IMG/VR virus record: IMGVR_UViG_3300029911_000001
Coordinates: 124,001-188,000 of that record
DNA: 64,000 nt
Reading direction: 5' to 3' (one strand)
The notes below the pieces were generated by a model. That model searched no databases, had not been told where the DNA came from, and worked only from the letters and a program-made list of their open reading frames with translations. Shown in pieces: positions 12,302 to 63,310 of this stretch (position 1 is its first letter; the number at the start of each line of letters is the position of its first letter). Position numbers and translations under genes: made by a program.

Positions 12302-15300
12302 ATGTCAATTAAGGCCCTGCAATCTTACACGTTCCATTCGAAGTATGCCCGTTACAACCCTGAGCTAAAACGACGCGATACATGGTCAGAATCAAATGAT
12401 CGTGTGCTCAACATGCACCTGAGTCGCTATCCACAAATTGCCGAGGAACTGAACTGGGCATTCGAACAATCCAAAGCCAAGCGGGTACTTGGGAGCCAAC
12501 GGGCTCTCCAGTATGCTGGTACACCCGTGCTCCGCAAGCACGCTCGTGTTTACAATTGCACTGTCTCCTACTGCGACCGTCTCCGCTTCTTCCAAGAATC
12601 CCTATGGTTATTGCTGTGTGGCTCTGGTGTAGGGTTCTCCGTTCAGAAGCACCACGTTGCCAAACTGCCTGACTTCCTCGAAGGCCGTCAGTTGGGCGTC
12701 CCACAGCGTGAAGTTGAGTTCTACATCCCCGATGACATCGAGGGATGGGCTGATGCTCTCGGCAACCTGCTTGCCACGTACTTCCCTCACCCGGATTACC
12801 CGGAGTGTGCGGGTGCGAACATCAAGTTCAATTACAGCCTCATCCGTCCGAAGGGCTCCAAGCTTTCGTCCGGTGTAGGTAAGGCACCCGGCCCCGAACC
12901 ACTGGCTAAGTCACTGGAAGCCATCCGTGGACTCCTCGACCGCTGCTTGGCTGATGGACAGGCTCGTCTCCGTTCCATCGACGCCTACGACGTTGTGATG
13001 CACGCCAGCGATGCCGTGCTCTCAGGTGGCGTCCGTCGCTCAGCGACCATCTGCATCTTCTCGCCGGACGATGATTTGATGGCACGTGCCAAAATTGGCG
13101 ACTGGTACTACACCAACCCGCAGCGTGGCCGTTCCAACAACTCCGCGATGCTCGTGCGTAGCGCAACCAGCCGTGAAGACTTTCATGGACTAATGGGGTG
13201 GGTTAAGCAGTTTGGGGAACCGGGCTTTGTGTGGTCGGACTCCACTGAGATGATGTTTAATCCTTGTTTTCATCCTGAGGAAAGAATCTCCACCATAAAT
13301 GGGATGGAACGGCTGATTGATATGTTCCATACAGGTCAACCTAATCAGGTAGCTTATGATTCCCGTGCAGGTAAGTCCGATGAGCTTGACCTCAATCGCA
13401 AGGGGATTCAACTGTCCTCGGCATCAAAGGTCAAACTTACCCAAACTCAGGCCCCCTTGTTTCAGTTGAACACTGAGCATGGCCACACCCTCAGGGTCAC
13501 CGAGAACCACGAATTTCCGACCTTACGGGGGAGGCTGAAGCTAAGCTCTCTGGTACCCGGAGATACACTCCTACTCCCCTCGGCGGAACTCCCCTTTGGT
13601 AAGGACGGCTCGTTCGCCGCAGGTTTGGTACTCGGACTTATCACCGGGGACGGCTTCGTCAGTGGTCATCAAGCCTTCGTGGACGTGTGGAAAGCTGACT
13701 TCGATGTCTTAGACACGGTAAAGGAGTACATTCACTCGCTTATCGAACAGGTTCCTAGCAACGCCAATGGTGTCCGTGAGTATACCCAGTTGGATTGGGT
13801 GAAGCAGGGGGAGGACAAACGCAGGATAGGCGGACTGCGTCTCTATCGGTTCTTGAGGGAGAACTTGAACATCGAAGACCCGGCGACGATCAAGGATAAT
13901 ATTCCTGAGTGTGTATGGCGTGGGTGTCGGGAGATGGTGGTGGGTTACCTACAAGGACTTATGTTTGCAGACGGTGGCTTGAATCTGAGTGACCACAAAA
14001 AAGTACCTACTTTCTCTTGGCGACTTAACCAGAGCAATGAAGCCCTGCTGGTAGAGGTGCAGAGGTTGTTCGCGATGTTCGCGGTGGTTTCGAGGGTAAC
14101 TCCGCGTAGAAAGGCGGGGCGAACCCTTCTTCCCGATGGGCGCGGTGGCTCTAAACTCTATGCTACCAAAGACAACTTCGAACTCATTTTGAATCGACCT
14201 AATAGTATTAGGGCATACGAGGTCGTAGGGTGTTTCGGTCGCAAGAAGGATATCCTTCAGTCTCTGATGGGGTACTGTGGGACAAATTGTCGTAAACCGG
14301 AACGATTCATTACCAAAGTAAAATCCATCACACCTTGTGGTGTGTCCGATGTGTACTGCCTTACTCAATACACTTCCAACACCGTCATAGCAAATGGTTT
14401 GGTTACGGGTCAGTGTGTTGAAATTGGCATGTACCCGGTCGATGTCACCACTGGTCTCAGCGGATGGGCGTTCTGCAATCTCTGCGAAATCAATGGCAAG
14501 AAGTGCAAGACCAAGGAAGACTTCGCTATCGCTGCTAGGGCTGCTGCCATCATCGGCACGGCACAGGCTGGCTACACCGACTTCGAATACCTTGGTCAGA
14601 CTACCAAGAACATCGCCGACCGTGAGGCCCTTCTGGGTGTCAGCATCACCGGCATGATGGACTCGCCGGAGATTCTCTTCGACCCTAAAATTCAGCGTGA
14701 GATGGCACAGCTTGTTGTCGCCACCAACAAGGAAATCGCGGCGAAGATTGGTATCCGTCAGGCAGCACGTTGCACTTGCGTGAAGCCAGCCGGAACCACG
14801 TCCTGCATCCTCGGCACATCGAGCGGTATTCACGCTCACCACTCCAAGCGTTACATCCGCCGCGTTCAAGCCAACATGCTGGAAGCTCCATACCAGTTCT
14901 TGGCTGAGAAGAACCCGCGTGCGGTGGAGAAGAGCGTGTGGTCGAAGAATGGCACCGACTCGGTGATTGCATTTTGTATCGAGACGGCTGAAGGTGCTCG
15001 TACCCGCAAGGATATGACCGCCATCAAGCTGCTTGAGCATGTACGTTTGACGCAGAACAACTGGGTGGAAGCTGGCCGCAATGCTGAGCTTTGCACACAA
15101 CCCTATCTTCGTCACAACGTGTCGAACACCATCAACGTCCGCCCTGATGAATGGGACGAGGTTGAAGCCTACATCTACGAGCACCGTCAGGATTTCGCGG
15201 GTGTGTCCTTGCTTTCTAGCACGGGTGACCTTGATTATCCTCAGGCTCCCTTCAGTGCCATTCACACCCCGGCTGAAATCGTCAAGCTGTATGGCGACGG

Positions 15301-15724
15301 AAGCTTGATGGCTTCGGGTCTTATTGTCGATGGCCTCGCGGCGTTCGATAACAACCTATGGTTGGCTTGCGACTACGTGAACGGTGTCAACAAGCTGGAG
15401 TGCCCGGAACCGGTGGCAGTTGTTGACGATAACGGTAATGAGATTCACCCCACGGAAATCGAGATGGCTGAACGTGAGGAAGTCTTCAAGTGTGCTGTGA
15501 AGCGTGACTGGATTCGTCGTGCTCATCAGTTCTCTGACCGCTACTTCGAGGGCGACCGTAAGCTCATGAGTTACTGCCTGAAGGAAGTTCACAACTGGAA
15601 GTATTGGTGCGACCTTCAGCGTGAGTACGTCGATGTAGACTACAAAGACCTCATCGAAGAAGAAGACAACACCAAGATTCAGGACACGGTAGCTTGCGCT
15701 GGAGGTGTGTGTAGTTTTATGTAG
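12302..15724 (+). CDS. nrdJ: Class II (B12-dependent) ribonucleotide reductase with intein
   Basis: NCT, LLCGSGVGFS, GGVRRSA, NP/CVEI active site split by the intein, CVKPAGT, C-terminal CAGGVC; no class I Tyr-Tyr pair and no adjacent beta subunit. Confidence 0.85.
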   Translation: MSIKALQSYTFHSKYARYNPELKRRDTWSESNDRVLNMHLSRYPQIAEELNWAFEQSKAKRVLGSQRALQYAGTPVLRKHARVYNCTVSYCDRLRFFQESLWLLLCGSGVGFSVQKHHVAKLPDFLEGRQLGVPQREVEFYIPDDIEGWADALGNLLATYFPHPDYPECAGANIKFNYSLIRPKGSKLSSGVGKAPGPEPLAKSLEAIRGLLDRCLADGQARLRSIDAYDVVMHASDAVLSGGVRRSATICIFSPDDDLMARAKIGDWYYTNPQRGRSNNSAMLVRSATSREDFHGLMGWVKQFGEPGFVWSDSTEMMFNPCFHPEERISTINGMERLIDMFHTGQPNQVAYDSRAGKSDELDLNRKGIQLSSASKVKLTQTQAPLFQLNTEHGHTLRVTENHEFPTLRGRLKLSSLVPGDTLLLPSAELPFGKDGSFAAGLVLGLITGDGFVSGHQAFVDVWKADFDVLDTVKEYIHSLIEQVPSNANGVREYTQLDWVKQGEDKRRIGGLRLYRFLRENLNIEDPATIKDNIPECVWRGCREMVVGYLQGLMFADGGLNLSDHKKVPTFSWRLNQSNEALLVEVQRLFAMFAVVSRVTPRRKAGRTLLPDGRGGSKLYATKDNFELILNRPNSIRAYEVVGCFGRKKDILQSLMGYCGTNCRKPERFITKVKSITPCGVSDVYCLTQYTSNTVIANGLVTGQCVEIGMYPVDVTTGLSGWAFCNLCEINGKKCKTKEDFAIAARAAAIIGTAQAGYTDFEYLGQTTKNIADREALLGVSITGMMDSPEILFDPKIQREMAQLVVATNKEIAAKIGIRQAARCTCVKPAGTTSCILGTSSGIHAHHSKRYIRRVQANMLEAPYQFLAEKNPRAVEKSVWSKNGTDSVIAFCIETAEGARTRKDMTAIKLLEHVRLTQNNWVEAGRNAELCTQPYLRHNVSNTINVRPDEWDEVEAYIYEHRQDFAGVSLLSSTGDLDYPQAPFSAIHTPAEIVKLYGDGSLMASGLIVDGLAAFDNNLWLACDYVNGVNKLECPEPVAVVDDNGNEIHPTEIEMAEREEVFKCAVKRDWIRRAHQFSDRYFEGDRKLMSYCLKEVHNWKYWCDLQREYVDVDYKDLIEEEDNTKIQDTVACAGGVCSFM
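13265..14413 (+). mobile_element. 383-aa intein with LAGLIDADG homing endonuclease
   Basis: Starts CFHPEE, block B TENHEF, LGLITGDG and LQGLMFADG motifs, ends ANGLVTGQ|C; removal restores NPCVEI. Confidence 0.92.
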
Positions 15725-17976: not shown

Positions 17977-18579
17977 ATGACATTTGATAGGTACGGACGT
18001 AAACTGAAGAGACGCCGGACGTGGAAGGCTCTACCCCTACTCTGGATTGGTGCAGCAGTGGTAGGAGCCGCCATTGCCGCCCCGACATGCAGCAAGTTCA
18101 TCCCGACCACGACCGTGACCAAGGTGAAGAACCGTGTGAGTAAGACCACGGCAGACGCTTGGGCGAAGTGGCGTATCGCCCACCCCAACTGGAAGCCCAA
18201 TCCCAAGGTCGTTAGACCAAAGTACAAGATGACGACTCAGGAAGCTGTAGCTAAGGTAGAGTTCGCTTGCCAAGCTACTATTCTCGATGTGACCCCGCCA
18301 GAGATTCAACTGGATACGGTCTCGCCGCCCACCATTGAGTTGGCCCTGACCCCGGTCGAGCCTCCGCCTGTCACCCCTGATGTGGTAACCGACACTACGC
18401 CGGACACGCCTCCGGACACGCCCCTGACGCCTGTGCTGTTCACTGCACTGTCCTCACCGCCCACGCTCATCCCCTCGTCGCCCCTTGCCCCCACTCCTGA
18501 GCCGGGAAGCCTGTGGCTGATGGGCACTGGTTTGCTCTTCGTCGCAGCCGGTGTGCAGTATCAGAAAAGAAAAGTGTAG
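17977..18579 (+). CDS. PEP-CTERM sorting-domain protein
   Basis: C-terminus TPEPGSLWLMGTGLLFVAAGVQYQKRKV (PEP, TM helix, basic tail); N-terminal hydrophobic segment; Pro/Thr-rich linker. Confidence 0.8.
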   Translation: MTFDRYGRKLKRRRTWKALPLLWIGAAVVGAAIAAPTCSKFIPTTTVTKVKNRVSKTTADAWAKWRIAHPNWKPNPKVVRPKYKMTTQEAVAKVEFACQATILDVTPPEIQLDTVSPPTIELALTPVEPPPVTPDVVTDTTPDTPPDTPLTPVLFTALSSPPTLIPSSPLAPTPEPGSLWLMGTGLLFVAAGVQYQKRKV

Positions 18580-18619
18580 CGTTTTTCTGACAACCGTGTA
18601 TTATAGGTTCATACCACAT

Positions 18620-18800
18620 TGGCTTAGCAAGCTACAGCTTCGAGGTATCAGACTTACGGGGTCGATGTGGAGTAAGGCCCCGGAAACCCTTTGTGGAAGT
18701 AGAAGCTGGCACTGTCAGGGCACCGGGGACAGCAAACCCCTCAAGCCGACGAAAGACTCAGGGAACGGTAGCAACCCGGACTGACCCACAAAGCTAATTG
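18620..18800 (+). ncRNA. Candidate structured ncRNA, family unknown; strand assumed
   Basis: No ORF; long-range CTTTGTGG(18689)/CCACAAAG(18786) pairing enclosing several hairpins; TATTAT at 18599. Confidence 0.4.
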
Positions 18801-18821
18801 AAGAAATTCGAAAAATAGTTG

Positions 18822-18849
18822 TTGCAGTTTTCCCAATTTGTAGTATCTT
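18822..18849 (+). promoter_or_regulatory. Sigma70-like promoter of tRNA operon 1
   Basis: TTGCAG-16 nt-TATCTT. Confidence 0.55.
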
Positions 18850-18869: not shown

Positions 18870-18998
18870 ATGAACAGCACTCGCTCCAACTCGACCGTAG
18901 CCGTAGCCCCCGCAGTAGCGGTCGGCGTCGTGCGTGTCGCAGCCGCCGCTGAAGATTGCGCGGGAGGCGAGATGCTGGCCTTGGGTGGTGGAAACTAA
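18870..18998 (+). CDS. 42-aa attenuator-like leader peptide (Val/Ala/Gly/Glu/Asp/Cys-rich)
   Basis: RBS AGAGGA; MNSTRSNSTVAVAPAVAVGVVRVAAAAEDCAGGEMLALGGGN*. Confidence 0.75.
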   Translation: MNSTRSNSTVAVAPAVAVGVVRVAAAAEDCAGGEMLALGGGN

Positions 18999-19053
18999 CT
19001 AAGTTAGAATCCAAACCAACCGAGGCCACCCTAACCGGGTGGCTTTCTTATTT
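18977..19053 (+). terminator. Overlapping antiterminator (18977-19027) and intrinsic terminator (19023-19053)
   Basis: Terminator AGGCCACCC-TAACC-GGGTGGCTT plus TCTTATTT; GGCCTTGG(18977) can pair with CCGAGGCC(19020). Confidence 0.8.
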
Positions 19054-19066
19054 GGTGGCAACAAAT

Positions 19067-19142
19067 GCGGGGGTAGATTAGCGGCTAAATCATCGCCCTT
19101 ACAAGACGACTATCGTGGGTTCGAGTCCCACCCTCCGCACCA
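19067..19142 (+). tRNA. tRNA-Val(UAC)
   Basis: Cloverleaf, loop CT-TAC-AA, encoded CCA. Confidence 0.9.
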
Positions 19143-19172
19143 AGATTCGCAGTATTAGATGTTCAGATGTAT

Positions 19173-19247
19173 GCGGGATTAGTTCAGTGGTAGAACGCTT
19201 CCTTGCCAAGGAAGAGGTCGAGGGTTCGAATCCCTCATCCCGCTCCA
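19173..19247 (+). tRNA. tRNA-Gly(GCC)
   Basis: CTTCC-TT-GCC-AA-GGAAG; CCA. Confidence 0.95.
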
Positions 19248-19309
19248 AAAGTTTAGAGTCTCAGTGACTCGATGATGTATAGGTATTTGACAATTTAGGT
19301 TTGAATTTT

Positions 19310-19383
19310 GGGGTCGTCGTTCAGTGGGAGGACAACACGCTTGCACCGTGTCAACAGGGGTTCGAATCCCCTCGGCTCCACCA
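19310..19383 (+). tRNA. tRNA-Ala(UGC)
   Basis: ACACG-CT-TGC-AC-CGTGT; G3.U70; CCA. Confidence 0.9.
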
Positions 19384-19391
19384 AAAACGCT

Positions 19392-19652
19392 CTAAATGTG
19401 GTAACGTCCACGTTGCAACGTCCCAGATTTGCAAATTGGGTGCACAAAGGGGATGAAGCCCGTCTTTGCTTGTAGCAACTCGGTGGAATTGTGGTTTTTG
19501 TTATAATTGTTTGAGGAGTGGTTGGTACATTTTCTACACCATGAATTAAGGGTTATAGTAGTACCATTCTTATTCCTTCTGGTACGAACCCCAAAATACT
19601 CCTTTGAGGCGGGATGGTTGGTGTTACATTTAGAACACAGCTTGGATTCCAT
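19392..19652 (-). pseudogene. Antisense Zn-finger ORF, probable HNH-type endonuclease remnant
   Basis: ATG with RBS GGAG; KLCSKC...WCRKC; no complete nuclease domain. Confidence 0.45.
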
Positions 19653-19701
19653 TGCTTCTCCTAAGTTAGCTAATACAATGGAATCCAATAGTTGAAAAGA
19701 T

Positions 19702-20030
19702 TGCACCAGAGACTTCGGACAATCGCGACGTGAGCGCAATACTCACTTCGAGGAAATTCGGGGCATCATAGAACAACCTAGTGGGTAACGCCCACGCAGT
19801 GGAACATCACTGACGACAAGTGCCACAGAGACGAGCCTCTTCAGTGAGGAGTGAAACGCGGTAAACTTCTAGGTGATGCAACTTCAAATAGGCCGACAGG
19901 TGCTGTTCGTACCGTTATGAATCGGCGGGTTGAGGGCTAGAGCGTTGTGGTAACACAACGTCGAGACGAATGATTGTCGAACCACCGAAAGGTGGGGAAC
20001 AGAACCCCGGTTATAGAAGTCTCTGGTGCA
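19702..20030 (+). ncRNA. rnpB: RNase P RNA (bacterial type A-like)
   Basis: 15-bp P1 TGCACCAGAGACTTC/GAAGTCTCTGGTGCA; GAGGAAATTCGGGC (19750), AAGTGCCACAGA (19818), GTGAAACGCGGTAAAC (19851), ACAGAACCCCGGTTA (19999). Confidence 0.92.
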
Positions 20031-20040
20031 GTAAAGTTTT

Positions 20041-20157
20041 GAGTGCTCGTACCTCAGTGAACGCCGATGCGATGTTTGCCATCGGGGCGGTAGAGGACGG
20101 CCTACCCGAGCAGTTAGCGGATGGAAGAAGTCATGGGTTCGAACCCCATCGGCACTC
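20041..20157 (+). ncRNA. tRNA-like RNA with a hairpin inserted in the D-loop and no clear anticodon arm
   Basis: D-stem CCTC/GAGG, T-arm ATGGG-TTCGAAC-CCCAT, acceptor-like GAGTGC/GCACTC. Confidence 0.5.
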
Positions 20158-20271
20158 AAATAAGATGGACGACACCTGTCCAAGGACGTTCCACATGTGA
20201 GTGTGGTGTAGGCAAGCGGATATGCTCCGAAGCTGAGTCCAGTGGTGTGACGCCGGGGAGAGCACCGGGCT

Positions 20272-20345
20272 GCGGGATTAGTGTAGTGGTAACACGTCAT
20301 CCTTCCAAGTTGAAGTCAGGGGTTCAAGTCCCCTATCCCGCTCCA
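20272..20345 (+). tRNA. tRNA-Gly(UCC)
   Basis: Loop CT-TCC-AA; CCA. Confidence 0.92.
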
Positions 20346-20438
20346 AGTTCAAGCCATCCCAATACTGACGCACAAAGGCGGGTACGGTTCTAGGGTAATG
20401 GTGCGGGAGGATAACCTAAACCGCAAGTTTAGATTCAT

Positions 20439-20515
20439 GCACCGATAGCCAAGACGGTAAGGCGACAGATTGCAACCCTGTTAATGCGGGAGTTCGATTC
20501 TCCCTCGGTGCTCCA
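20439..20515 (+). tRNA. tRNA-Cys(GCA)
   Basis: Loop TT-GCA-AC; U73; CCA. Confidence 0.92.
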
Positions 20516-20524
20516 AGTTTCAAA

Positions 20525-20600
20525 GGGCGATTAGCTCAGTTGGGAGAGCGTTTCCATGGCATGGAAAAGGTCAAGGGTTCGAGCCCCTTATTGTCCACCA
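20525..20600 (+). tRNA. tRNA-Ala(GGC)
   Basis: TTTCC-AT-GGC-AT-GGAAA (A32-U38); G3.U70; CCA. Confidence 0.93.
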
Positions 20601-20879
20601 GTTTAGAAGAGGATGGAAAACTGGAAAGTTCCCGGTAACGGTGACACAATCCGGCTCACTGGCTCTCTAAAAGACACTGCACGTCTCTAAATGGCAGCGT
20701 AAGCGGCACGACACGTCCACCAAGTTTGGGGTAGCACTAGCGCACACCGCATATCAGGCGCGTGTCGGCAATAGGCTTGCAGATAGAAGTAAAGCTGCGG
20801 AACACAGTTTGAACTCGTGGTACGGACACAGTTTCGTCGTCAGCCGGTGAGCTAACACCGCTGGTGCCACGCGAAGTTT

Positions 20880-20954
20880 GGTGCTGTATCATAATGCCAA
20901 TGAACTCCCCTGTCGAGGGAGCTTATGAGGGTTGAACTCCCTTCAGCACCGCCA
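20880..20954 (+). tRNA. tRNA-Asp(GUC), atypical D/T loops
   Basis: CTCCC-CT-GTC-GA-GGGAG; G73; D-loop lacks GG; T-loop TTGAACT. Confidence 0.75.
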
Positions 20955-21014
20955 TTTTTTCAACTACAGAACCCTTATATGTAAGTCACTTCTGATACAT
21001 ATAAGGGTTCGATA

Positions 21015-21635
21015 ATGGCTAAAAAGAAAGAGAAAGAAGAAGCAATCAGGTTACGTGTTGAACACCGTCTCTCATTGGAAGTTATTTCTAAACAGTTAGG
21101 TGTATCTCAGAGTAGTTGCTCCTTATGGTTGAGAGGTTACCCTCTATCGGAGCAAGAAAAGAGCACTCGCAAACCCCCCTCTACGAAAGGTATTGCGCGT
21201 AAGATTCGGGGGGATAGGTCAAAGTTTTCTAATGTAGTTGACGGGCAGGAACTTACAAAATCTCGTAAGGGGAGAATAGCTGAATCTGCAATTCTATTTC
21301 GGTTGGCTCTTCATGGTCTGACCCCCTACGGTTCCCCGTTTGATGGTGATAAGACCGATTGGGTAGTAGAGAATGCACAAGGTAGAACTATGAAGGTACA
21401 AGTGAGGTGGGCGCGTGAGGCTAGAAAAGGGCTACCTTTTATCTCACTTCGAATTTCGGATGGGAGGCACAACACTCGTCGGTACACGGAAAATGAATTT
21501 GACTTTATTGTGGCTTACGACCTGTACACAGATACGGCTTATGTATTTAATCAAGAGGATGTAAGGAACAATACCGCACTTATCGCAGTATCAGAGGAGA
21601 GGGCGGAGAAGTGGCAACAGTTACTGGATTTTTGA
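21015..21635 (+). CDS. Free-standing PD-(D/E)XK endonuclease with N-terminal HTH
   Basis: KGRIAE...TDWVVE...KVQVR...FDFIVAY pattern; inserted in the tRNA array. Confidence 0.75.
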   Translation: MAKKKEKEEAIRLRVEHRLSLEVISKQLGVSQSSCSLWLRGYPLSEQEKSTRKPPSTKGIARKIRGDRSKFSNVVDGQELTKSRKGRIAESAILFRLALHGLTPYGSPFDGDKTDWVVENAQGRTMKVQVRWAREARKGLPFISLRISDGRHNTRRYTENEFDFIVAYDLYTDTAYVFNQEDVRNNTALIAVSEERAEKWQQLLDF

Positions 21636-21648
21636 TGAGGAAACAAGT

Positions 21649-21852
21649 ATGTGTCAAGCGTTTACACCGGACATGCGGAACTTCGATGAGAAGCCGTACA
21701 CACCGGATGAGCAGCGAGTAGTCAAGTACCTAGTTGAACTCACCAATGGAACGATTGGCGGCGGTGACGACCCTATCGGGTTCCTCATCGCGAGTCATGC
21801 AACGCTTTCTGACTTGAATGTGAAGCGTTGTCGAGAGGAAGCACATGGTTGA
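21649..21852 (+). CDS. Small hypothetical protein
   Basis: ATG with RBS GAGGA. Confidence 0.55.
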   Translation: MCQAFTPDMRNFDEKPYTPDEQRVVKYLVELTNGTIGGGDDPIGFLIASHATLSDLNVKRCREEAHG

Positions 21853-22009
21853 CTTTGAAGCAAACGGTTGGCGTAAGTTGACAGCAGAAGAGCAGGAAGG
21901 CATTCGTGAGTTTGAGCGAGTGATGAAGGAAGAGACCATACCTGCCATCGTGAAGACTATCCGTCTCCGTCAGGAATTGGCTAATGAATATCGAGGAATT
22001 TTGTACTAA
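21845..22009 (+). CDS. Small hypothetical protein (54 aa), not in the ORF track
   Basis: MVDFEANGWRKLTAEEQEG...; RBS GAGGA; overlaps the previous stop. Confidence 0.55.
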   Translation: MVDFEANGWRKLTAEEQEGIREFERVMKEETIPAIVKTIRLRQELANEYRGILY

Positions 22010-22014
22010 TGTTT

Positions 22015-22091
22015 GGGGATGTAACTCAGTCGGTCAGAGTATTCGCCTGTCGAGCGAAAAGTCGCGGGTTCGAACCCCGTCATCCCCGCCA
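22015..22091 (+). tRNA. tRNA-Asp(GUC)
   Basis: TTCGC-CT-GTC-GA-GCGAA; canonical; CCA. Confidence 0.95.
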
Positions 22092-22096
22092 AGTGT

Positions 22097-22200
22097 GAGA
22101 TGTAGTGTCAAGGTGTGGCGTTTGTATACGAACGTGAGCATCATTAGAACGGGGCCTTGTTGCGGCTCTGGTGTGGGTGAAAATCCCGCCGTCTCCGCCA
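22097..22200 (+). ncRNA. Degenerate tRNA-like unit
   Basis: GAGATG/CGTCTC acceptor-like, ends GCCA; T-like arm GTGGG-TGAAAAT-CCCGC; no 7-nt anticodon loop. Confidence 0.4.
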
Positions 22201-22271
22201 GTTTCAAATGTTGCAGCACGGTTTCAGTGAGTCCTGAAATGGCTGAAGGTTGGAGTAAGCTGATTGAATCT

Positions 22272-22346
22272 ACACCCGTAGCTCAGAGATAGAGCGTCTC
22301 CTTGACGTGGAGAGGGTCGGGGGTTTAATTCCCTCCGGGTGTACCA
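22272..22346 (+). tRNA. tRNA-Val(GAC)
   Basis: TCTCC-TT-GAC-GT-GGAGA; CCA. Confidence 0.92.
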
Positions 22347-22374
22347 AAGCAGGAGAGTTTGAAGTTACCAGAGT

Positions 22375-22432
22375 CGGGATGTAGCTCAGTGGTAGAGCCT
22401 AAAAGTCGCAGGTTCGATTCCTGCCTTTCCTA
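22375..22432 (+). pseudogene. tRNA-like unit lacking the anticodon arm
   Basis: Canonical D arm GCTC-AGTGGTA-GAGC joined by CTAAAAGTC to canonical T arm GCAGG-TTCGATT-CCTGC; weak acceptor stem. Confidence 0.7.
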
Positions 22433-22644
22433 TACGACGCTCTGGTGGACTGAAAGGCGGGAAGCGTATCGTGCTCGTATTCACATTGCGCGTACCGCCC
22501 AAGTTTATTAATGATGAGTTTCAAGTTCGAGAGTTGGAACCAGCAGCGGAACATATAGCAGCCCTCACAGCTATCGCGTGCTAGGTAAGGGCAAGGACGA
22601 AGAGGCAGCATGGAAAGATGCTGTCCGTCGCAAGAAACAGATTT

Positions 22645-22723
22645 GGGGCAAGGGACTGCCGGGGGTGGTCACCTCATTCGCAATGAGGAATTCAGCGGGG
22701 TTCAAGTCCCCGTTGCTCCACCA
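22645..22723 (+). tRNA. tRNA-Ala(CGC), atypical D arm
   Basis: CCTCA-TT-CGC-AA-TGAGG; GGGGCAA/TTGCTCC with G3.U70; CCA. Confidence 0.85.
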
Positions 22724-22731
22724 AAAGTTTC

Positions 22732-22806
22732 GGGGTTATAGCTCAGAGGGAGAGCACCGCATTTGCAATGCGGGGGTCGAGATTTCAAAATTCTCTAACT
22801 CCACCA
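22732..22806 (+). tRNA. tRNA-Ala(UGC), second copy
   Basis: CCGCA-TT-TGC-AA-TGCGG; G3.U70; CCA. Confidence 0.88.
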
Positions 22807-22826
22807 CTTTATTAGTCAAAAGTTTC

Positions 22827-22904
22827 GGGCGGTCTGGAATAAGAGTTTCAGACAGGCTGCACATAGAGGCAGAAGGGTGAGTTCGAATCCCTTCACGTCC
22901 ACCA
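22827..22904 (+). ncRNA. Degenerate tRNA-like unit with Ala-type acceptor end
   Basis: GGGCG/CGTCC-A-CCA (G3.U70); GTTCGAAT in an enlarged T-loop; anticodon unresolved. Confidence 0.45.
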
Positions 22905-22921
22905 ATTTTGAGGTTGATTGA

Positions 22922-23179
22922 ATGAAGTTCACACGTCGTCAGTTCTTCGCAGGGCTCCCGGTATTCATCATGCCGGGGTGGATGAAGGCGATAGCCTCAT
23001 GGTTCCAGCCTGAGGTCGCCGTAGTAAAGGCTCCTCTAATCAAGGGCTCGACCCAACTAAATGATGTCCTGCCAAAGCGTGTGATGGTACCAACGTTCGA
23101 AATAGTTTCGTGTCCGACAATCTTGCTCAAGGAAATCAAGGAGCGTAGGTTCAGGATACAAAGTGGGCCGGTAGCATAA
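22922..23179 (+). CDS. Small protein with twin-arginine-like N-terminus
   Basis: MKFTRRQFFAG; RBS GAGG. Confidence 0.55.
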   Translation: MKFTRRQFFAGLPVFIMPGWMKAIASWFQPEVAVVKAPLIKGSTQLNDVLPKRVMVPTFEIVSCPTILLKEIKERRFRIQSGPVA

Positions 23180-23243
23180 TGGGAATGCACATTCCTTGCG
23201 GCGAGTAACCGCACCCACCCGGCTCCAGTTTGAAAGGAGCTTC

Positions 23244-23426
23244 ATGGCTAAGTACACAGTACGTAACAAGGAAGGGCACCTTCTCGGAAGGACTGATAGC
23301 CCTGAGGTTTTGGTAGAAGAGATTTGCGAAGTATGTGAGAAGCAAGGAATTATTTACCACGTACACCCCGAGTCGGAAGAGCATAAAGGGTCTCCTAGCT
23401 TTCGACCAATGAAGTTTAGCAGATGA
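23244..23426 (+). CDS. Small hypothetical protein
   Basis: ATG with RBS AAGGAG. Confidence 0.55.
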   Translation: MAKYTVRNKEGHLLGRTDSPEVLVEEICEVCEKQGIIYHVHPESEEHKGSPSFRPMKFSR

Positions 23427-23452
23427 AATGGAAAAGCACGAAGGTTAAGTTT

Positions 23453-23527
23453 GGCCCTGTCCTCCAACGGTCAGGAGAGTGGGTTCTCAACCCGACAACA
23501 AGGGTTCAACTCCCTTCAGGGCCACCA
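23453..23527 (+). tRNA. tRNA-Glu(CUC)
   Basis: Loop TT-CTC-AA; GGCCCTG/CAGGGCC; CCA. Confidence 0.88.
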
Positions 23528-23534
23528 GTTTTAT

Positions 23535-23609
23535 GGCGCATTCGTTCATTGGTTAGGACCGGTGTTTTTCAAGCACCAGAAGAGGTTTCGATTACCTCAT
23601 GCGCTACCA
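23535..23609 (+). tRNA. tRNA-Glu(UUC)
   Basis: GGTGT-TT-TTC-AA-GCACC; CCA. Confidence 0.88.
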
Positions 23610-23992
23610 ATTTCGCTGGGAGGTCGGTGTGGACTCAGGCGACTCGCTGCAACCGAGTAGGCGTTGCGGGAGATATGCGAGGGAAAGATTGATCTTCCTG
23701 TCAGAACATCGGCAGTTGAAGTGGGCACCGGGGCTGAAGGGTCATCGCTAGAACAGGGTGGCCCTTCAGCAAAGTCTGCCGACCATTTGATACAATAGCT
23801 GGATGAGACGAGGCTACCAATGAACTGTACTAAGTGTGGTGAATCAGCCCTCGGAGTAGCTCTTGATGGACTACCTTACTGTCATCGCACAGAGTGTATT
23901 TTATGGAAGGTGGAATTGCAACGGTATCGGGATTTGCAAGCTCTCCCTTTTCCAGCACCGCAGCGACCGTTTGCAAAAAGTTTGGTGTTTAA

Positions 23993-24068
23993 GCGGGATT
24001 AGCTCAGTTGGTAGAGCGTTTCCTTCCCAAGGAAAATGTCGCGGGTTCGAGTCCCGCATCCCGCTCCA
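23993..24068 (+). tRNA. tRNA-Gly(CCC)
   Basis: TTTCC-TT-CCC-AA-GGAAA; canonical; CCA. Confidence 0.95.
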
Positions 24069-24086: not shown

Positions 24087-24794
24087 ATGAGCTTAGCATT
24101 GTACCCCACCGGCCAGCTTAGATTCTGGACGGAACAAGAAATCTCTCTTCGCGATGGTCTCATCCATCGTCTCTTCCATGTTGTGAAAGCTCCGCTTCAG
24201 ACTCTGAACAAGGCGTGGCGTTTCGAACGTGTTGAAGGCCCCCTACTCACTCCTGCCGACTACATCAGCCCAGCCTACACCGAGGATGACCTATGGGTAA
24301 CCAAGGGTCTAATCGCGGCTCAGGGTGTCGCCATGAGAGCGGAGACCACCGCATCCAGTTACATCTACGCCAAGCATCTGATGTCTCAGGAAGGCGGTAG
24401 CAATAAGCTACCTCTCTGCGTGTGGCAGTCAGGCAAGAGCTTCCGCAAGGAAGAGAGCGATGGTGCATCCGCATCCCGGCTCCGCTTCTTCGAGTTCTAT
24501 CAGCTTGAGTTCCAGTGCATCTACAGCAAGACCACCGGAGCCGATTACGTCGCCCCGGTCACATCTCGCGTGATGAAGGAACTTGAACTCATCACGGGGC
24601 ACAAAGCCCGTCTCGTTCGCTCCGACCGTCTCCCCTCTTATAGTGAAGCCACCTTCGATGTTGAAGTAGACTTCAACGGGCACTGGCGTGAGATGTGCAG
24701 CATTTCACAACGCACCGATTTCGAGGGTGCCAAGGTGTTGGAAGTCGCCATCGGTCTCGACCGGCTGGTAGCAGTCATCGGGGGTGGTGTCTAG
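24087..24794 (+). CDS. Minimal class II aaRS catalytic core, alpha2-type GlyRS-like, no anticodon-binding domain
   Basis: MRAETT, QSGKSFRKE, RFFEFYQLEFQ, LPSYS, EMCSISQRTDF, LEVAIGLDRL. Confidence 0.78.
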   Translation: MSLALYPTGQLRFWTEQEISLRDGLIHRLFHVVKAPLQTLNKAWRFERVEGPLLTPADYISPAYTEDDLWVTKGLIAAQGVAMRAETTASSYIYAKHLMSQEGGSNKLPLCVWQSGKSFRKEESDGASASRLRFFEFYQLEFQCIYSKTTGADYVAPVTSRVMKELELITGHKARLVRSDRLPSYSEATFDVEVDFNGHWREMCSISQRTDFEGAKVLEVAIGLDRLVAVIGGGV

Positions 24795-28730: not shown

Positions 28731-28854
28731 CGGTCGTATCCTCGTCTCAGGTATCCCAAATAAGGGGTCTATCCATGAGCTTGATAGCCAAAATTATTTT
28801 GTGACTACCGACGCCTATAAGTATAGGGGCATCTCGCCTCGTTATGGGAGTCAC

Positions 28855-62717: not shown

Positions 62718-62825
62718 TAAAGAAACTGAAGTTCTGCATCGGTTATGCGTGGGCTGCTTGCCGTATGACTTGGGACATGTTGAAGACCCTCGGCAAAGGC
62801 TAACGAAAGAAATTCAAAATAAGTG

Positions 62826-62853
62826 TTTACTTTCTCGAACTTCGTAGTATTAT
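62826..62853 (+). promoter_or_regulatory. Sigma70-like promoter of tRNA operon 2
   Basis: TTTACT-16 nt-TATTAT. Confidence 0.6.
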
Positions 62854-62923
62854 GTATAAGAAGTCGCTGCCGGAGCCATCTCTGCACACGCACATGGCCG
62901 GGGCAAGACAAAAGGAATTGAAA

Positions 62924-63013
62924 ATGAACCGTCTCTCACACAACACGACCCTCGGACTAAGCTTGTATTACCTGCTTAGCAGCGGCCTCGTGCTGTCCGA
63001 CAGACCCTCCTAA
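62924..63013 (+). CDS. 29-aa attenuator-like leader peptide (Leu/Ser/Tyr-rich)
   Basis: RBS AAGGA; MNRLSHNTTLGLSLYYLLSSGLVLSDRPS*. Confidence 0.75.
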   Translation: MNRLSHNTTLGLSLYYLLSSGLVLSDRPS

Positions 63014-63068
63014 CAAGAGCAAGGTTCAAGGATACACGAAGCCGCCCGAAAGGGTGGCTTTTAGTTTT
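62982..63068 (+). terminator. Overlapping antiterminator (62982-63045) and intrinsic terminator (63039-63068)
   Basis: Terminator AAGCCGCCC-GAAA-GGGTGGCTT plus TTAGTTTT; GCGGCCTCGTG(C)TGTCC can pair with GGATACACGAAGCCGC. Confidence 0.82.
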
Positions 63069-63155
63069 GGGCAGATGCGTGAGTGGCTAAAACGGGCTGG
63101 CTGTAACCCAGCTTCCCTAGTGGATTCGGAGGTTCAAATCCTCCTCTGCCCACCA
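63069..63155 (+). tRNA. tRNA-Tyr(GUA)
   Basis: GCTGG-CT-GTA-AC-CCAGC; long variable arm; CCA. Confidence 0.93.
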
Positions 63156-63166
63156 AAATTGAATAC

Positions 63167-63254
63167 GCAAGTAAGGCGACTATCGGTTGGTCGCACCGGG
63201 CTGTAAACTCGTTGCCCTAAAAAGCCGCTGGGGGTTCGACTCCCTCTACTTGCA
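63167..63254 (+). tRNA. tRNA-Tyr(GUA), second divergent copy, CCA not encoded
   Basis: GCAAGTA/TACTTGC-A; loop CT-GTA-AA; long variable arm. Confidence 0.8.
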
Positions 63255-63310
63255 CTTTCGTGACTACCGACCTCTTTAAGTAGAGGTATCTCTTGGAGGT
63301 CGGTAGGTTC

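What the first reader, a model, noticed from the sequence alone, without database searches (positions are those of the whole stretch)
19067..24068. tRNA array sorted by codon class: only GNN-decoding tRNAs plus Cys
Seen: Val(UAC,GAC), Ala(UGC x2,GGC,CGC), Gly(GCC,UCC,CCC), Asp(GUC x2), Glu(CUC,UUC), Cys(GCA). Together these can read every GNN codon under standard wobble rules, and no other amino acid except Cys is represented. Inference: the functional sorting fits one co-regulated unit read out by leader 1, rather than random accretion.
Basis: seen in the sequence. Interest (0 to 1): 0.65.

Follow-up and report, generated by a model that had tools for sequence, protein, structure and literature searches.

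The report
Leader-gated sorted tRNA array in phage
A huge peat-soil phage keeps all its tRNAs for GNN codons (plus Cys) and its own RNase P ribozyme in one operon behind a short leader peptide made of those same amino acids and a terminator, which looks like a previously undescribed way for a virus to switch on a set of tRNAs only when decoding of their codons runs short.

Summary
They read all 16 GNN codons plus UGY. The genome is an IMG/VR phage record of 231 kb, about 74% complete, and all 13 of its GNN tRNAs lie in this array.

Upstream lie a sigma-70-type promoter and a 42-codon leader ORF (18870-18998) in which 27 of 41 codons are read by the array, including one Cys codon. An intrinsic terminator (19022-19046) follows, and a covarying antiterminator competes with it.

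The lineage has at least four more such modules: Tyr/Leu, Pro/Phe, Thr/Ile/Gln and Ser. Each leader matches its own array.

Four related huge phages carry the same GNN+Cys array with RNase P RNA and a homologous leader holding exactly one Cys. The cultured jumbo phage Tunturi 5 partitions its tRNAs differently, and its leaders follow that partition.

"Codon class" is therefore not the general rule. The rule is amino-acid sets matched to leaders.

Function is inferred from sequence. No RNA data exist, and eight literature searches found no description of this.

The parts
18803..18849 (+). Sigma-70-type promoter. It has an A-rich upstream element (GAAATTCGAAAAATAG), a -35-like TTGTTG/TTGCAG and a -10-like TAGTAT/TATCTT.
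   Evidence: The same motif heads the other tRNA modules of the genome, at genome 186809, 193708 and 65689 (minus strand), and the Ser module in L006. This is a sequence match only; no start site has been mapped.
18870..18998 (+). Leader ORF 1, 42 codons: MNSTRSNSTVAVAPAVAVGVVRVAAAAEDCAGGEMLALGGGN. An AGAGGA Shine-Dalgarno-like sequence lies 8-13 nt upstream.
   Evidence: 27 of 41 sense codons are read by the array's tRNAs, against a background of 0.352 (P=6e-5). Homologous leaders stand in four relatives, each with exactly one Cys.
18975..19027 (+). Antiterminator. Its 5' strand (18975-18989) lies in the last codons of the leader. It pairs with 19011-19027, which overlaps the terminator's 5' strand.
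   Evidence: It appears in the MFE fold. The duplex energy is -28.2 kcal/mol, against -19.5 for a shuffled ORF (2 of 200 shuffles as good). RNAalifold on the five homologues predicts this helix with 6 compensatory pairs. 86.7% of cells are paired against 74.8% in shuffles (0 of 500), and slid controls give 33-60%.
19022..19055 (+). Intrinsic terminator: GAGGCCACCC-TAACC-GGGTGGCTTT followed by CTTATTT. It ends 12 nt before the first tRNA.
   Evidence: The terminator scan finds 10 pairs. The fold energy is -21.1 kcal/mol. Only three sense-strand copies of this hairpin motif exist in the genome, and all three are leader modules.
19067..19142 (+). tRNA-Val (TAC)
19173..19247 (+). tRNA-Gly (GCC)
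19310..19383 (+). tRNA-Ala (TGC)
19707..20029 (+). Bacterial type A RNase P RNA, a shortened form. The conserved core and P4 are kept. The P12 region is shortened, and a further region of 43 model positions is reduced to 1 nt.
   Evidence: RF00010 scores 179.6 bits against a gathering score of 100, over model positions 1-367. In four relatives it sits in the same place, always followed by Gly-TCC.
20038..20160 (+). tRNA-like element with a long closing stem and a T-arm but no CCA. It starts 9 nt after the RNase P RNA.
   Evidence: T-arm scan and fold. It is not called by ARAGORN or Rfam.
20272..20345 (+). tRNA-Gly (TCC)
20439..20515 (+). tRNA-Cys (GCA), the one non-GNN member
   Evidence: tRNA-Cys is also present in the complete GNN arrays of G003, G004 and G005. 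The G007 array is cut by the contig end.
20525..20600 (+). tRNA-Ala (GGC)
20880..20954 (+). tRNA-Asp (GTC), atypical. The T-loop reads TTGAACT and the D-loop lacks GG.
   Evidence: 52 bits; sequence.
21015..21635 (+). ORF of 206 aa with an HTH domain and a PD-(D/E)XK endonuclease domain. It is probably a mobile, homing-type insertion in the array.
   Evidence: Pfam PF11645 at 5e-8 plus HTH_23; phrog_5018.
22015..22091 (+). tRNA-Asp (GTC)
22094..22202 (+). Degenerate tRNA-like element ending in CGCCA
   Evidence: 25.1 bits, below the cut-off; fold.
22272..22346 (+). tRNA-Val (GAC)
22375..22432 (+). tRNA-like element with acceptor, D and T arms but no anticodon arm and no CCA
   Evidence: RF00005 at 42.3 bits; fold.
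22645..22723 (+). tRNA-Ala (CGC)
   Evidence: 33.9 bits.
22732..22806 (+). tRNA-Ala (TGC), second copy
22822..22906 (+). tRNA-like element ending in ACCA
   Evidence: Fold z-score -2.3. It is not called by ARAGORN.
23453..23527 (+). tRNA-Glu (CTC)
23535..23609 (+). tRNA-Glu (TTC)
23993..24068 (+). tRNA-Gly (CCC). This is the only anticodon whose sole codon (GGG) is absent from the leader.
62809..63061 (+). Second module in the window: a promoter, leader ORF 2 (62924-63013, MNRLSHNTTLGLSLYYLLSSGLVLSDRPS) and a terminator (63038-63061). It heads the Tyr/Leu array.
   Evidence: 10 of 28 codons are read by its own array (P=0.003). The antiterminator duplex is -30.5 kcal/mol, with 0 of 200 shuffles as good.
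63069..63255 (+). Two tRNA-Tyr (GTA) genes, the first genes of the Tyr/Leu array. The array continues beyond the window.

Best explanation
The stretch is one transcription unit of a huge phage from peat. It runs: strong sigma-70-type promoter, 42-codon leader ORF, intrinsic terminator, 14 tRNA genes for Val/Ala/Gly/Asp/Glu/Cys with an embedded RNase P RNA.

It most likely works as a ribosome-mediated transcription attenuator of the classical trp/his/ilv type, but its output is tRNA rather than biosynthetic enzymes.

- If the leader's GNN and Cys codons are decoded quickly, the ribosome runs to the stop codon. There it unwinds or covers the 5' strand of the antiterminator, which lies in the last codons of the ORF. 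The terminator then forms, and transcription stops 12 nt before the first tRNA.
- If decoding of these codons is slow because the matching charged tRNAs are scarce, the ribosome stalls upstream. Scarcity could come from codon-usage mismatch, host shut-off or tRNA-cleaving defence systems. The antiterminator then pairs with the terminator's 5' strand, and RNA polymerase reads into the array.

The tRNAs are sorted because one leader can report only on the codons it contains. Each array is therefore a regulon whose members are the tRNAs sampled by its leader. The whole tRNA complement is divided among about six such regulons.

The RNase P RNA is released from the same precursor by the flanking tRNAs and would help mature the array.

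Shown here: the gene content, the sorting, the leader/array codon match, the terminator, the covarying alternative helix, and conservation in relatives. Inferred: translation of the leader, regulated read-through, and the physiological signal.
For: Content and sorting.

Leader 1 codon match: 27 of 41, P=6e-5.

Repeated design: three homologous promoter/leader/terminator modules lie in the genome, and they hold the only three sense-strand copies of the terminator motif. Further modules are:
- a Pro/Phe leader, MKFTSPNPSFPPCPTLHGPDL, before tRNA-Pro;
- a Ser leader, MKNTLSISSSSTSSSSW.., which uses all six Ser codons and stands before tRNA-Ser in a near-identical phage contig that extends past this record's end.

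Permutation test: in this lineage and in two complete relatives (455 and 463 kb), the true leader-to-array assignment is the single best of 120, 720 and 720 permutations.

Conservation: GNN+Cys-only arrays with an embedded RNase P RNA and a homologous leader holding exactly one Cys occur in four relatives. Gene order inside those arrays is rearranged.

A different partition: the cultured phage Tunturi 5 divides its tRNAs differently, and its leaders track that division.
- MKTLCLSSYCLSSSLSLS.. precedes Leu/Cys/Tyr/Ser.
- ..QHVSTFRFAVPATAGNPAGQQGT.. precedes Gln/Gly/Thr/Pro/His/Ala/Phe.
- ..DFDIRGKRGVVVDTWDITIRGERKW.. precedes Trp/Asp/Met/Lys/Val/Arg/Glu.
Diagonal fractions are 0.45, 0.49 and 0.60, with P=8e-4 to 8e-3.

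Terminators: -17 to -25 kcal/mol in all modules.

Antiterminator: duplexes between the ORF's 3' third and the spacer plus terminator 5' strand give -23 to -36 kcal/mol. In 9 of 11 modules at most 3 of 200 shuffles do as well. The helix covaries.

Co-transcription of the ribozyme: RNase P RNA lies 5-6 nt from its flanking tRNAs in two relatives, which leaves no room for a separate promoter.

Against recent local duplication: tRNAs for different amino acids in one array are not significantly more alike than tRNAs in different arrays (0.518 against 0.492; 132 of 2000 permutations reach this).
Against: There is no RNA evidence. All 24 public runs that hold the stretch are recorded as DNA or unlabelled.

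An equilibrium simulation with a ribosome masked at each codon shows only shallow, narrow dips in terminator probability, because the terminator is very stable. The model therefore depends on co-transcriptional kinetics, which I could not simulate.

Without a ribosome, the MFE of leader 1 is already the antiterminated form. No clear 1:2 protector hairpin of the trp type was identified.

A possible extended -10 (TGTTATAAT, about 19493-19501) and about 2 kb of inserted ORFs could break the array into sub-units.

The match is partial. 14 of 41 leader codons are not read by the array, GGG (Gly-CCC) is not sampled, and the Tyr/Leu leaders are also Ser-rich although the Ser tRNAs lie elsewhere.

The modules in the relatives are orthologous, so the genomes are not independent replicates.

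The Pro-type leaders lack a canonical T-tract terminator.
Confidence: 0.72

Rival explanations
1. The sorting is only a record of history. The array grew by local duplication and anticodon switching, or was inherited as a block. The upstream small ORFs are incidental, and the hairpin is the terminator of the upstream gene.
For: Isoacceptor duplicates exist: Gly-GCC and Gly-CCC are 88% identical. Partial synteny is shared among relatives, for example Val, Gly-GCC, Ala-TGC ... RNase P, Gly-TCC, so conserved membership could be inheritance. Isoacceptors also sit next to each other in phages with mixed arrays.
Against: tRNAs for different amino acids in one array are no more alike than tRNAs across arrays. 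History does not explain why each leader is rich in its own array's amino acids in five or six paralogous modules per genome. It does not explain why the Cys codons move with tRNA-Cys in Tunturi 5. It also does not explain why the terminator lies after a promoter and an ORF rather than directly after the upstream gene. The hairpin has a covarying competitor helix.
Confidence: 0.1
2. The promoter-leader-terminator module does regulate the array, but it does not sense the cognate tRNAs. It could be a general gauge of translation or of transcription-translation coupling. The peptides could have their own function. The terminator could simply set a fixed low level of read-through.
For: Without a ribosome the antiterminator is favoured in leader 1, so any translation would lower read-through. 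Equilibrium modelling shows little dependence on codon position. One leader in Tunturi 5 is annotated as an ordinary protein, gp308.
Against: A general sensor needs no amino-acid bias. Yet the composition differs sharply between the paralogous leaders of one genome and follows the downstream tRNAs. The biased codons sit upstream of the antiterminator strand, as in classical attenuators.
Confidence: 0.13
3. The pattern is chance or an artefact: a mis-assembled contig, mis-called tRNAs, or a post-hoc pattern.
For: The GNN pattern was noticed after the fact. Two tRNAs score low (33.9 and 52 bits). Several tRNA-like remnants show decay.
Against: P is 4e-8 at the tRNA level and 0.002 at the family level. 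The pattern recurs in four other genomes. Independent metagenome contigs tile the locus. ARAGORN and Infernal agree.
Confidence: 0.01

Closest known systems
Leader-peptide transcription attenuators of amino-acid biosynthetic operons in Enterobacteria (trp, his, leu, thr, ilvGMEDA, ilvBN, pheA). The multivalent thr (Thr+Ile) and ilvGMEDA (Ile/Leu/Val) leaders are the nearest. This comparison rests on established knowledge.
   Same: A short ORF stands just after the promoter with a run of codons for the relevant amino acids. An intrinsic terminator lies before the first structural gene. A mutually exclusive antiterminator is controlled by ribosome position. Some of these leaders report on several amino acids at once.
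   Different: The regulated genes here are tRNAs and a ribozyme, so the sensor and the product are the same molecule class (direct feedback on decoding capacity). The system is phage-encoded. Up to six amino acids share one leader. Five or six paralogous modules together cover the whole tRNA set. No clear 1:2 protector hairpin was found.
The pheST attenuator (pheM leader) of E. coli and the Pro-codon leader mgtP of Salmonella mgtCBR (PMC3641672, seen)
   Same: Leader-peptide attenuation is applied to genes outside amino-acid biosynthesis. pheM controls a translation component, an aminoacyl-tRNA synthetase. mgtP reads Pro codons, as the Pro leaders here do.
   Different: Their outputs are proteins, each senses a single amino acid, and they are chromosomal.
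T-box riboswitches (established knowledge)
   Same: They measure tRNA charging and control translation-related genes by a choice between terminator and antiterminator.
   Different: T-boxes bind uncharged tRNA directly and have no leader ORF. No T-box or other riboswitch model matched the window.
tRNA gene arrays of large phages, for example Tunturiibacter phage Tunturi 5 (PMC11924767), and the view of phage tRNAs as a counter to tRNA-targeting defences (PMC10264068, PMC11555353, PMC11464382)
   Same: Dozens of clustered tRNA genes lie together with tRNA repair and maturation enzymes. Isoacceptors are adjacent. A role in keeping translation going during infection is plausible.
   Different: Those descriptions do not report leader peptides, attenuators, sorting into amino-acid sets or a phage RNase P RNA. 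The Tunturi paper lists the tRNAs only, although I find three matched leaders in that genome.
Bacterial type A RNase P RNA (Rfam RF00010)
   Same: The match covers the full model, the conserved core is present, and P4 keeps its bulged U through compensatory changes.
   Different: It is encoded by a phage inside a tRNA operon and is shortened to 323 nt. No RnpA protein gene is found in the phage genomes. No similar sequence occurs in 50,697 deposited phage records by blastn.

Membership tests
Ribosome-mediated (leader-peptide) transcription attenuator | A short ORF with a start codon and ribosome-binding site between the promoter and the first structural gene | tested here: met
   The ORF is at 18870-18998, with AGAGGA 8-13 nt upstream and promoter-like elements at 18803-18849. 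ORFs of 40-46 codons are kept in four relatives.
Ribosome-mediated (leader-peptide) transcription attenuator | The leader is enriched in codons whose decoding reports on the regulated pathway | tested here: met
   27 of 41 codons, P=6e-5. The true assignment is the best of all permutations in three genomes. The same holds in Tunturi 5 with a different partition.
Ribosome-mediated (leader-peptide) transcription attenuator | An intrinsic terminator between the leader and the structural genes | tested here: met
   At 19022-19046: 10 pairs followed by a T-rich tail. Energies are -17 to -25 kcal/mol across modules.
Ribosome-mediated (leader-peptide) transcription attenuator | An alternative antiterminator helix that shares a strand with the terminator and is occluded by a ribosome at the end of the leader | tested here: met
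   Duplexes overlap 7-12 nt of the terminator's 5' strand. The consensus helix has 6 compensatory pairs. Shuffle and slide controls support it. Its 5' strand ends about 7-11 nt before the stop codon.
Ribosome-mediated (leader-peptide) transcription attenuator | A protector or pause hairpin (1:2) that gives termination when there is no translation | tested here: inconclusive
   The coding part of the leader folds on itself, but region 2 pairs with region 3 in the ribosome-free MFE. The ribosome-masking simulation is ambiguous.
Ribosome-mediated (leader-peptide) transcription attenuator | Read-through rises when the cognate charged tRNA is limiting | not testable with these tools
   No RNA runs hold the locus. 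This needs experiments.
Bacterial RNase P RNA, type A (RF00010) | The covariance-model score is above the curated threshold over the whole model | tested here: met
   179.6 bits against 100, over positions 1-367. Relatives score 165-208 bits.
Bacterial RNase P RNA, type A (RF00010) | Conserved catalytic core: the GAGGAAA..UC.GGG and ACAGAACCC.G.UUA strands forming P4, plus the ACAGA and GUGAAA motifs | tested here: met
   The alignment shows these blocks with high posterior probability. P4 is kept with compensatory changes (my reading of that alignment).
Bacterial RNase P RNA, type A (RF00010) | It cleaves pre-tRNA 5' leaders, with the RnpA protein as partner | not testable with these tools
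   No PF00825 match in G000, G003 or G004. A host protein would have to serve, or the RNA would act alone.
T-box riboswitch | A match to the T-box leader model (specifier loop and T-box sequence) | tested here: not met
   No match at gathering score in the window.
Phage tRNA array | Many tRNA genes clustered on one strand of a phage genome | tested here: met
   14 tRNAs lie in 5 kb, and 32 in the record. The record is an IMG/VR virus with UvsX-like recombinase, helicases, ribonucleotide reductase and a virion protein with an endolysin domain.

The most novel reading that the evidence does not exclude
A clade of huge phages, probably infecting Acidobacteriota, runs a modular homeostat for decoding capacity. 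Essentially every elongator tRNA family is assigned to one of about six regulons. Each regulon is gated by a leader peptide that samples that regulon's codons. The phage can therefore detect which tRNAs are short, for example after host shut-off or an attack by an anticodon nuclease. It then transcribes only that sub-array, and one sub-array also carries the phage's own RNase P ribozyme. This would be the first case of leader-peptide attenuation controlling tRNA genes, and the first phage-encoded RNase P RNA.
Probability: 0.55. Interest if true: 0.92.

Novelty: new variant of a known kind. Interest (0 to 1): 0.86.

Why it matters
Why phages carry tRNAs, and how they control them, is an old open question. 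If this reading is right, these genomes state the answer in their own sequence: tRNA supply is set by feedback from the ribosome, one codon set at a time.

That gives a testable link between phage tRNA arrays and two proposed pressures, host tRNA depletion and tRNA-cleaving defence systems.

It extends classical attenuation to non-coding RNA genes. It explains an otherwise puzzling gene order, in which the arrays are sorted because each leader can report only on what it contains.

It also provides natural, compact sensors of decoding capacity for defined codon sets, which could be reused as reporters.

The embedded RNase P RNA suggests that some phages also bring their own tRNA-maturation ribozyme.

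A cultured phage-host pair, Tunturi 5 and Tunturiibacter psychrotolerans, carries the same design, so experiments are possible now.

Tried and rejected
1. I scanned IMG/VR with the promoter pattern AAAATANNTGTT-N18-20-GTATTAT. It returned 111 mostly AT-rich chance hits, and none had a matching tRNA context. I abandoned this route.

2. I used the aaRS-like neighbour gene (24087-24794) to find relatives. It gave only a near-identical fragment and a distant 84-kb phage with 4 scattered tRNAs and no leaders. The RNA ligase gene inside the Thr/Ile/Gln array worked far better.

3. I ran an equilibrium partition-function simulation with a ribosome footprint masked at each codon. The terminators are too stable for an equilibrium model to discriminate, so I treat the result as inconclusive and not as evidence against the model.

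4. I tested the local-duplication origin of the sorting by tRNA sequence similarity. It is not supported.

5. I looked for an internal promoter. No + strand consensus site was found apart from a weak match that overlaps tRNA-Asp. A possible extended -10 at about 19493 is not conserved in the closest relative. This remains a caveat.

6. I looked for RNA evidence. No RNA run holds the stretch. Reads were laid on confirming the DNA (5401 letters, within the operators' limit).

7. I searched deposited phage genomes for the RNase P RNA by blastn and found no match. It is also absent from Tunturi 5 and from the relatives with mixed arrays.

8. I checked for recoding of TAG, since suppressor tRNAs with anticodon CTA are present. 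TAG ends 27 of 113 long ORFs and no genome-wide recoding is evident. No alternative genetic code was used anywhere.

9. I asked whether the leaderless-promoter tRNA-Met is an initiator. It lacks the C1-A72 mismatch and has only 2 of the 3 G-C pairs, so I make no claim.

Full report
**1. What is in the stretch**

ARAGORN finds 14 tRNA genes on the + strand between 19067 and 24068. Rfam's tRNA model supports 12 of them at gathering score in the window scan and the other two in a genome scan (52 and 33.9 bits). All 14 carry an encoded CCA. Together they read all 16 GNN codons plus UGY.

- a full-length bacterial type A RNase P RNA at 19707-20029 (179.6 bits against a threshold of 100);
- several degenerate tRNA-like elements at 20038-20160, 22094-22202, 22375-22432 and 22822-22906;
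- six ORFs, one of them an HTH + PD-(D/E)XK endonuclease that looks like a mobile insertion.

**2. Where it comes from**

The window is part of a single 231,108-bp IMG/VR virus record estimated to be 74% complete. The window encodes a UvsX-like recombinase, helicases, a ribonucleotide reductase and a virion protein with an endolysin domain. The stretch occurs in at least 24 peat metagenome runs. Contigs from four non-source runs tile it with 0-1 differences, so it is real and not chimeric.

The nearest deposited phage by blastn is Tunturiibacter phage Tunturi 5, a 309-kb jumbo phage of an acidobacterium. The host of the present phage is not established.

**3. Is the sorting more than chance?**

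The record holds 32 tRNAs and a tmRNA, in three arrays:
- minus strand, 61.5-67.4 kb: suppressor-CTA, Ile x2, Thr x3, Gln;
- this array;
- plus strand, 187-196 kb: Tyr x2, Leu x5, Pro x2, Met, Phe.

All 13 GNN decoders lie in this 14-gene array. P is 4e-8 at the tRNA level and 0.002 when amino-acid families are the units. No such run arose in 200,000 shuffles.

**4. The leader**

The region upstream of the first tRNA contains four elements.
- A promoter-like region (18803-18849) has an A-rich upstream element.
- A 42-codon ORF (18870-18998) encodes MNSTRSNSTVAVAPAVAVGVVRVAAAAEDCAGGEMLALGGGN.
- An intrinsic terminator follows at 19022-19046, with a T-rich tail.
- 27 of the 41 sense codons are read by the array, against 14.4 expected from the phage's own codon usage (P=6e-5). 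In codons 10-34, 23 of 25 are Val/Ala/Gly/Glu/Asp/Cys. These include a single Cys codon, which mirrors the odd Cys tRNA.

Eleven of the twelve distinct anticodons have a cognate codon in the leader. Only GGG (Gly-CCC) is missing.

**5. The design recurs, each time with a matching leader**

The terminator motif occurs only three times on a sense strand in the genome. Each copy follows a small ORF and a promoter of the same type.
- Leader 2 (window 62924-63013), MNRLSHNTTLGLSLYYLLSSGLVLSDRPS, precedes Tyr x2 and Leu x5. Its Leu codons are those read by the Leu anticodons present.
- Leader 3 (minus strand, genome 65464), MRLSAQTRITTTTTQTSVCGFVCGGIED, precedes Ile x2, Thr x3 and Gln.
- A Pro/Phe-rich leader, MKFTSPNPSFPPCPTLHGPDL, precedes the Pro tRNAs.
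- A near-identical phage contig runs about 54 kb past the end of this record. It carries a further module: the same promoter, the leader MKNTLSISSSSTSSSSWTGGGVVNV with all six Ser codons, the same terminator, then tRNA-Ser.

I found this last module by looking where the model said one should be.

**6. Relatives**

I used the RNA ligase gene that sits inside the Thr/Ile/Gln array as a probe and recovered 19 related loci.

One group has sorted arrays like this phage, with Ile/Thr/Gln, Tyr/Leu/Pro/Met/Phe and Trp/His/Arg sets. Another group has mixed arrays.

Four relatives encode an RNase P RNA. They include two genomes estimated complete, of 455 and 463 kb. In all four the RNase P RNA lies inside an array that contains only Val, Ala, Gly, Asp, Glu and Cys tRNAs (15, 16, 4 and 15 genes; the 4-gene array is cut by the contig end). 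It is always followed by Gly-TCC. In two of them the ribozyme is 5-6 nt from the flanking tRNAs, so it must be part of the same precursor. Gene order within these arrays is rearranged, but membership is kept.

Each array is headed by a homologous leader rich in V/A/G/E/D with exactly one Cys:
- MTIQTNISTSTVAAVAVVGVVAAAEAGCAGEDTMPLEVQG
- MNFNLTNATAVATTGGVVCAGEAGTVAAGAAVEDTMSSENDFD
- MSFLNANSTAADTIFGRNVVACAGTVAAEAAAVNEGDTMSLGGFGE
- MNFNFTNAGWQTGAVGAVAAVCEAEGIVAAGAADSVPSEGWDD

A census of the two complete genomes shows six leader-headed regulons each. They are Thr/Ile/Gln, GNN+Cys, Tyr/Leu, Pro/Met/Phe, Ser (+Leu-UAA) and Arg/His/Lys/Asn/Gln/Trp. A cluster of amber-suppressor tRNAs has no leader.

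In this lineage and in both complete genomes, the true leader-to-array assignment scores higher than every other permutation: 1 of 120, 1 of 720 and 1 of 720. A few tRNAs sit outside their set. An Ala lies just upstream of the leader in one genome, a Cys lies in the basic-residue array of another, and a Val lies beside the suppressor in a third.

**7. A natural control with a different partition**

Tunturi 5 groups its tRNAs differently, and its three leaders follow.
- MKTLCLSSYCLSSSLSLSDGW... precedes Leu, Cys, Leu, Leu, Tyr, Leu, Ser x3.
- ...MQHVSTFRFAVPATAGNPAGQQGTNACDTGGG... precedes Gln x2, Gly, Thr x3, Pro, His, Ala x3, Phe, Pro x3.
- MKQILKQLGHDFDIRGKRGVVVDTWDITIRGERKWSDVRDMRVLRERPV, annotated gp308, precedes Trp, Asp, Met x2, Lys, Val, Lys, Arg x2, Glu x2, Arg x2, Val.

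Own-array fractions are 0.45, 0.49 and 0.60, each well above the off-diagonal values (P=8e-4 to 8e-3). In Tunturi 5 the Cys tRNA sits with Leu/Tyr/Ser, and that leader carries two Cys codons. In the present clade it sits with the GNN tRNAs, and the GNN leader carries the Cys.

This covariation between leader composition and array membership, across lineages with different partitions, is the strongest argument that the link is functional. It also shows that "codon class" is not the organising principle. GNN purity is a property of one set in one clade.

**8. Mechanism**

All modules have a stable terminator directly before the first tRNA (-17 to -25 kcal/mol).

In each, the last 8-14 codons of the ORF can pair with the spacer and the 5' strand of the terminator. 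Energies are -23 to -36 kcal/mol, the overlap is 7-12 nt, and in 9 of 11 modules at most 3 of 200 shuffled ORFs do as well. This explains why the C-terminal parts of the leaders do not follow the array's composition: they are constrained by RNA pairing.

For the five GNN leaders, RNAalifold predicts this helix on its own, with six compensatory pairs. Counting gives 86.7% paired cells against 74.8% in shuffles (0 of 500) and 33-60% when the partner strand is slid.

The layout is that of a classical attenuator. Biased codons come first, then the antiterminator strand up to the stop codon, then the terminator. A ribosome that reaches the stop removes the antiterminator. A ribosome stalled on the biased codons leaves it free.

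The weak points are these:
- The ribosome-free MFE of leader 1 is already antiterminated.
- An equilibrium simulation with a masked ribosome shows only shallow dips.
- The Pro-type leaders use a different downstream structure, without a T-tract.
- Nothing is known about transcription in vivo.

**9. Rivals**

Recent local duplication does not explain the grouping. tRNAs for different amino acids in the same array are not significantly more similar than those in different arrays (0.518 against 0.492; 132 of 2000 permutations).

Inheritance of a block can explain conserved membership among relatives, but not the leader match or the Tunturi 5 covariation.

A general translation gauge would not need set-specific composition.

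Internal promoters cannot be excluded. No + strand consensus site or phage-type promoter lies inside the array. However, TGTTATAAT at about 19493 is a possible extended -10, and it is not conserved in the nearest relative.

**10. Comparison with what is known**

The logic is that of the trp/his/thr/ilv leaders, and of pheM-pheST for a translation component (established knowledge). The output differs, because it is tRNA genes plus a ribozyme. The scale differs too, because a set of paralogous leaders divides a whole tRNA complement. No T-box or other riboswitch model matches.

Eight full-text literature searches found no description of leader-controlled tRNA genes or of a phage RNase P RNA. "tRNA array" together with "leader peptide" gave zero papers. 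The Tunturi paper lists the tRNAs only. The library does not cover subscription journals, so prior description cannot be ruled out.

Recent work shows that phage tRNAs can defeat tRNA-cleaving defences (PMC10264068, PMC11555353, PMC11464382). That gives a plausible selective reason for set-specific induction, but it is my inference.

**11. Verdict**

Physiological function remains untested. I rate it a new variant of a known regulatory kind, with high interest.

No alternative genetic code was used, and no broken toxin or virus gene was involved.

Noticed in passing
window 19707-20029; L139 7812-8132; L140 7610-7960; L141 9315-9643; L142 8129-8503: This phage and four related huge phages encode a shortened type A RNase P RNA. 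It always lies inside the GNN+Cys array and is followed by tRNA-Gly(TCC). No RnpA protein gene is found in the phages. It is absent from Tunturi 5 and from relatives with mixed arrays. There is no blastn match in 50,697 phage records.
   Followed up: partly
window 19249, 20034, 20425, 20515, 20722, 20874, 21222, 22501, 22725, 22820, 23412, 23447, 23978 (+): The hexamer AAGTTT occurs 13 times on the sense strand of the array, against 1.6 expected (P=2e-8). It mostly sits just after a CCA end, just before a tRNA 5' end, or directly after the RNase P RNA. It may be a processing or punctuation signal.
   Followed up: partly
window 20038-20160, 22094-22202, 22375-22432, 22822-22906, 23160-23228: These are degenerate tRNA-like elements: one lacks the anticodon arm, some have long insertions, and some end in CCA. 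They lie between the bona fide tRNAs. They could be decayed genes or processing handles for the embedded ORFs and the ribozyme.
   Followed up: partly
genome 67323-67396 (minus strand, outside the window; L004); L121, L127, L144, L149: Amber-suppressor tRNAs (anticodon CTA) are present, one here and two or three in relatives. They form their own cluster with no leader. TAG is still used as a stop in 27 of 113 long ORFs.
   Followed up: partly
genome 71374-71774 (minus strand, outside the window): The phage encodes a tmRNA with tag peptide ANSNVALPIAA.
   Followed up: no
genome 193708-193835 (outside the window; L005 about 7009-7136): tRNA-Met has its own promoter of the same strong type but no leader or terminator. 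It is the only tRNA in this record with that arrangement. It does not show clear initiator features.
   Followed up: partly
window 17977-18579 (+): The gene just upstream of the promoter encodes a 200-aa protein ending in a PEP-CTERM sorting motif (PF07589). This is unusual for a phage and hints at a host with an exosortase system.
   Followed up: no
window 24087-24794 (+): The first gene after the array is a 235-aa protein with a weak match to the class II aminoacyl-tRNA synthetase core (PF00587, 25 bits, below the cut-off). It is too short to be a full synthetase. A 60% identical homologue exists in a distant phage.
   Followed up: partly
L004 1450-2049 (minus strand; genome about 62749-63348): An RNA ligase-like gene lies inside the Thr/Ile/Gln array (a KxDG motif, by eye). 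In some relatives its homologues sit instead inside the Tyr/Leu/Pro/Met/Phe array. No family search was run on it.
   Followed up: partly
L001 23658-23807 (PP885688 251573-251722): The annotated protein gp308 of Tunturi 5 is probably a leader peptide of an attenuator and not a conventional protein. Two further unannotated leaders lie at L001 3241-3339 and 11256-11420.
   Followed up: yes
L129 2880-3032: A relative with a mixed 37-tRNA array has a longer leader of 50 codons with mixed composition, followed by a terminator. The spacer resembles that of leader 1. This fits the rule but does not discriminate.
   Followed up: partly
window 28801-37275 (+) and 12302-15724 (+): There is a 2824-aa ORF of unknown function. 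There is also an 1140-aa ribonucleotide reductase whose match comes in two stretches, so it may carry an intein or another insertion.
   Followed up: no
window 18600-18790 (+): About 190 nt of non-coding, G+C-rich sequence lies between the PEP-CTERM gene and the promoter. A similar structured stretch lies between the promoter and leader 3 (genome 65640-65470). Neither was analysed.
   Followed up: no
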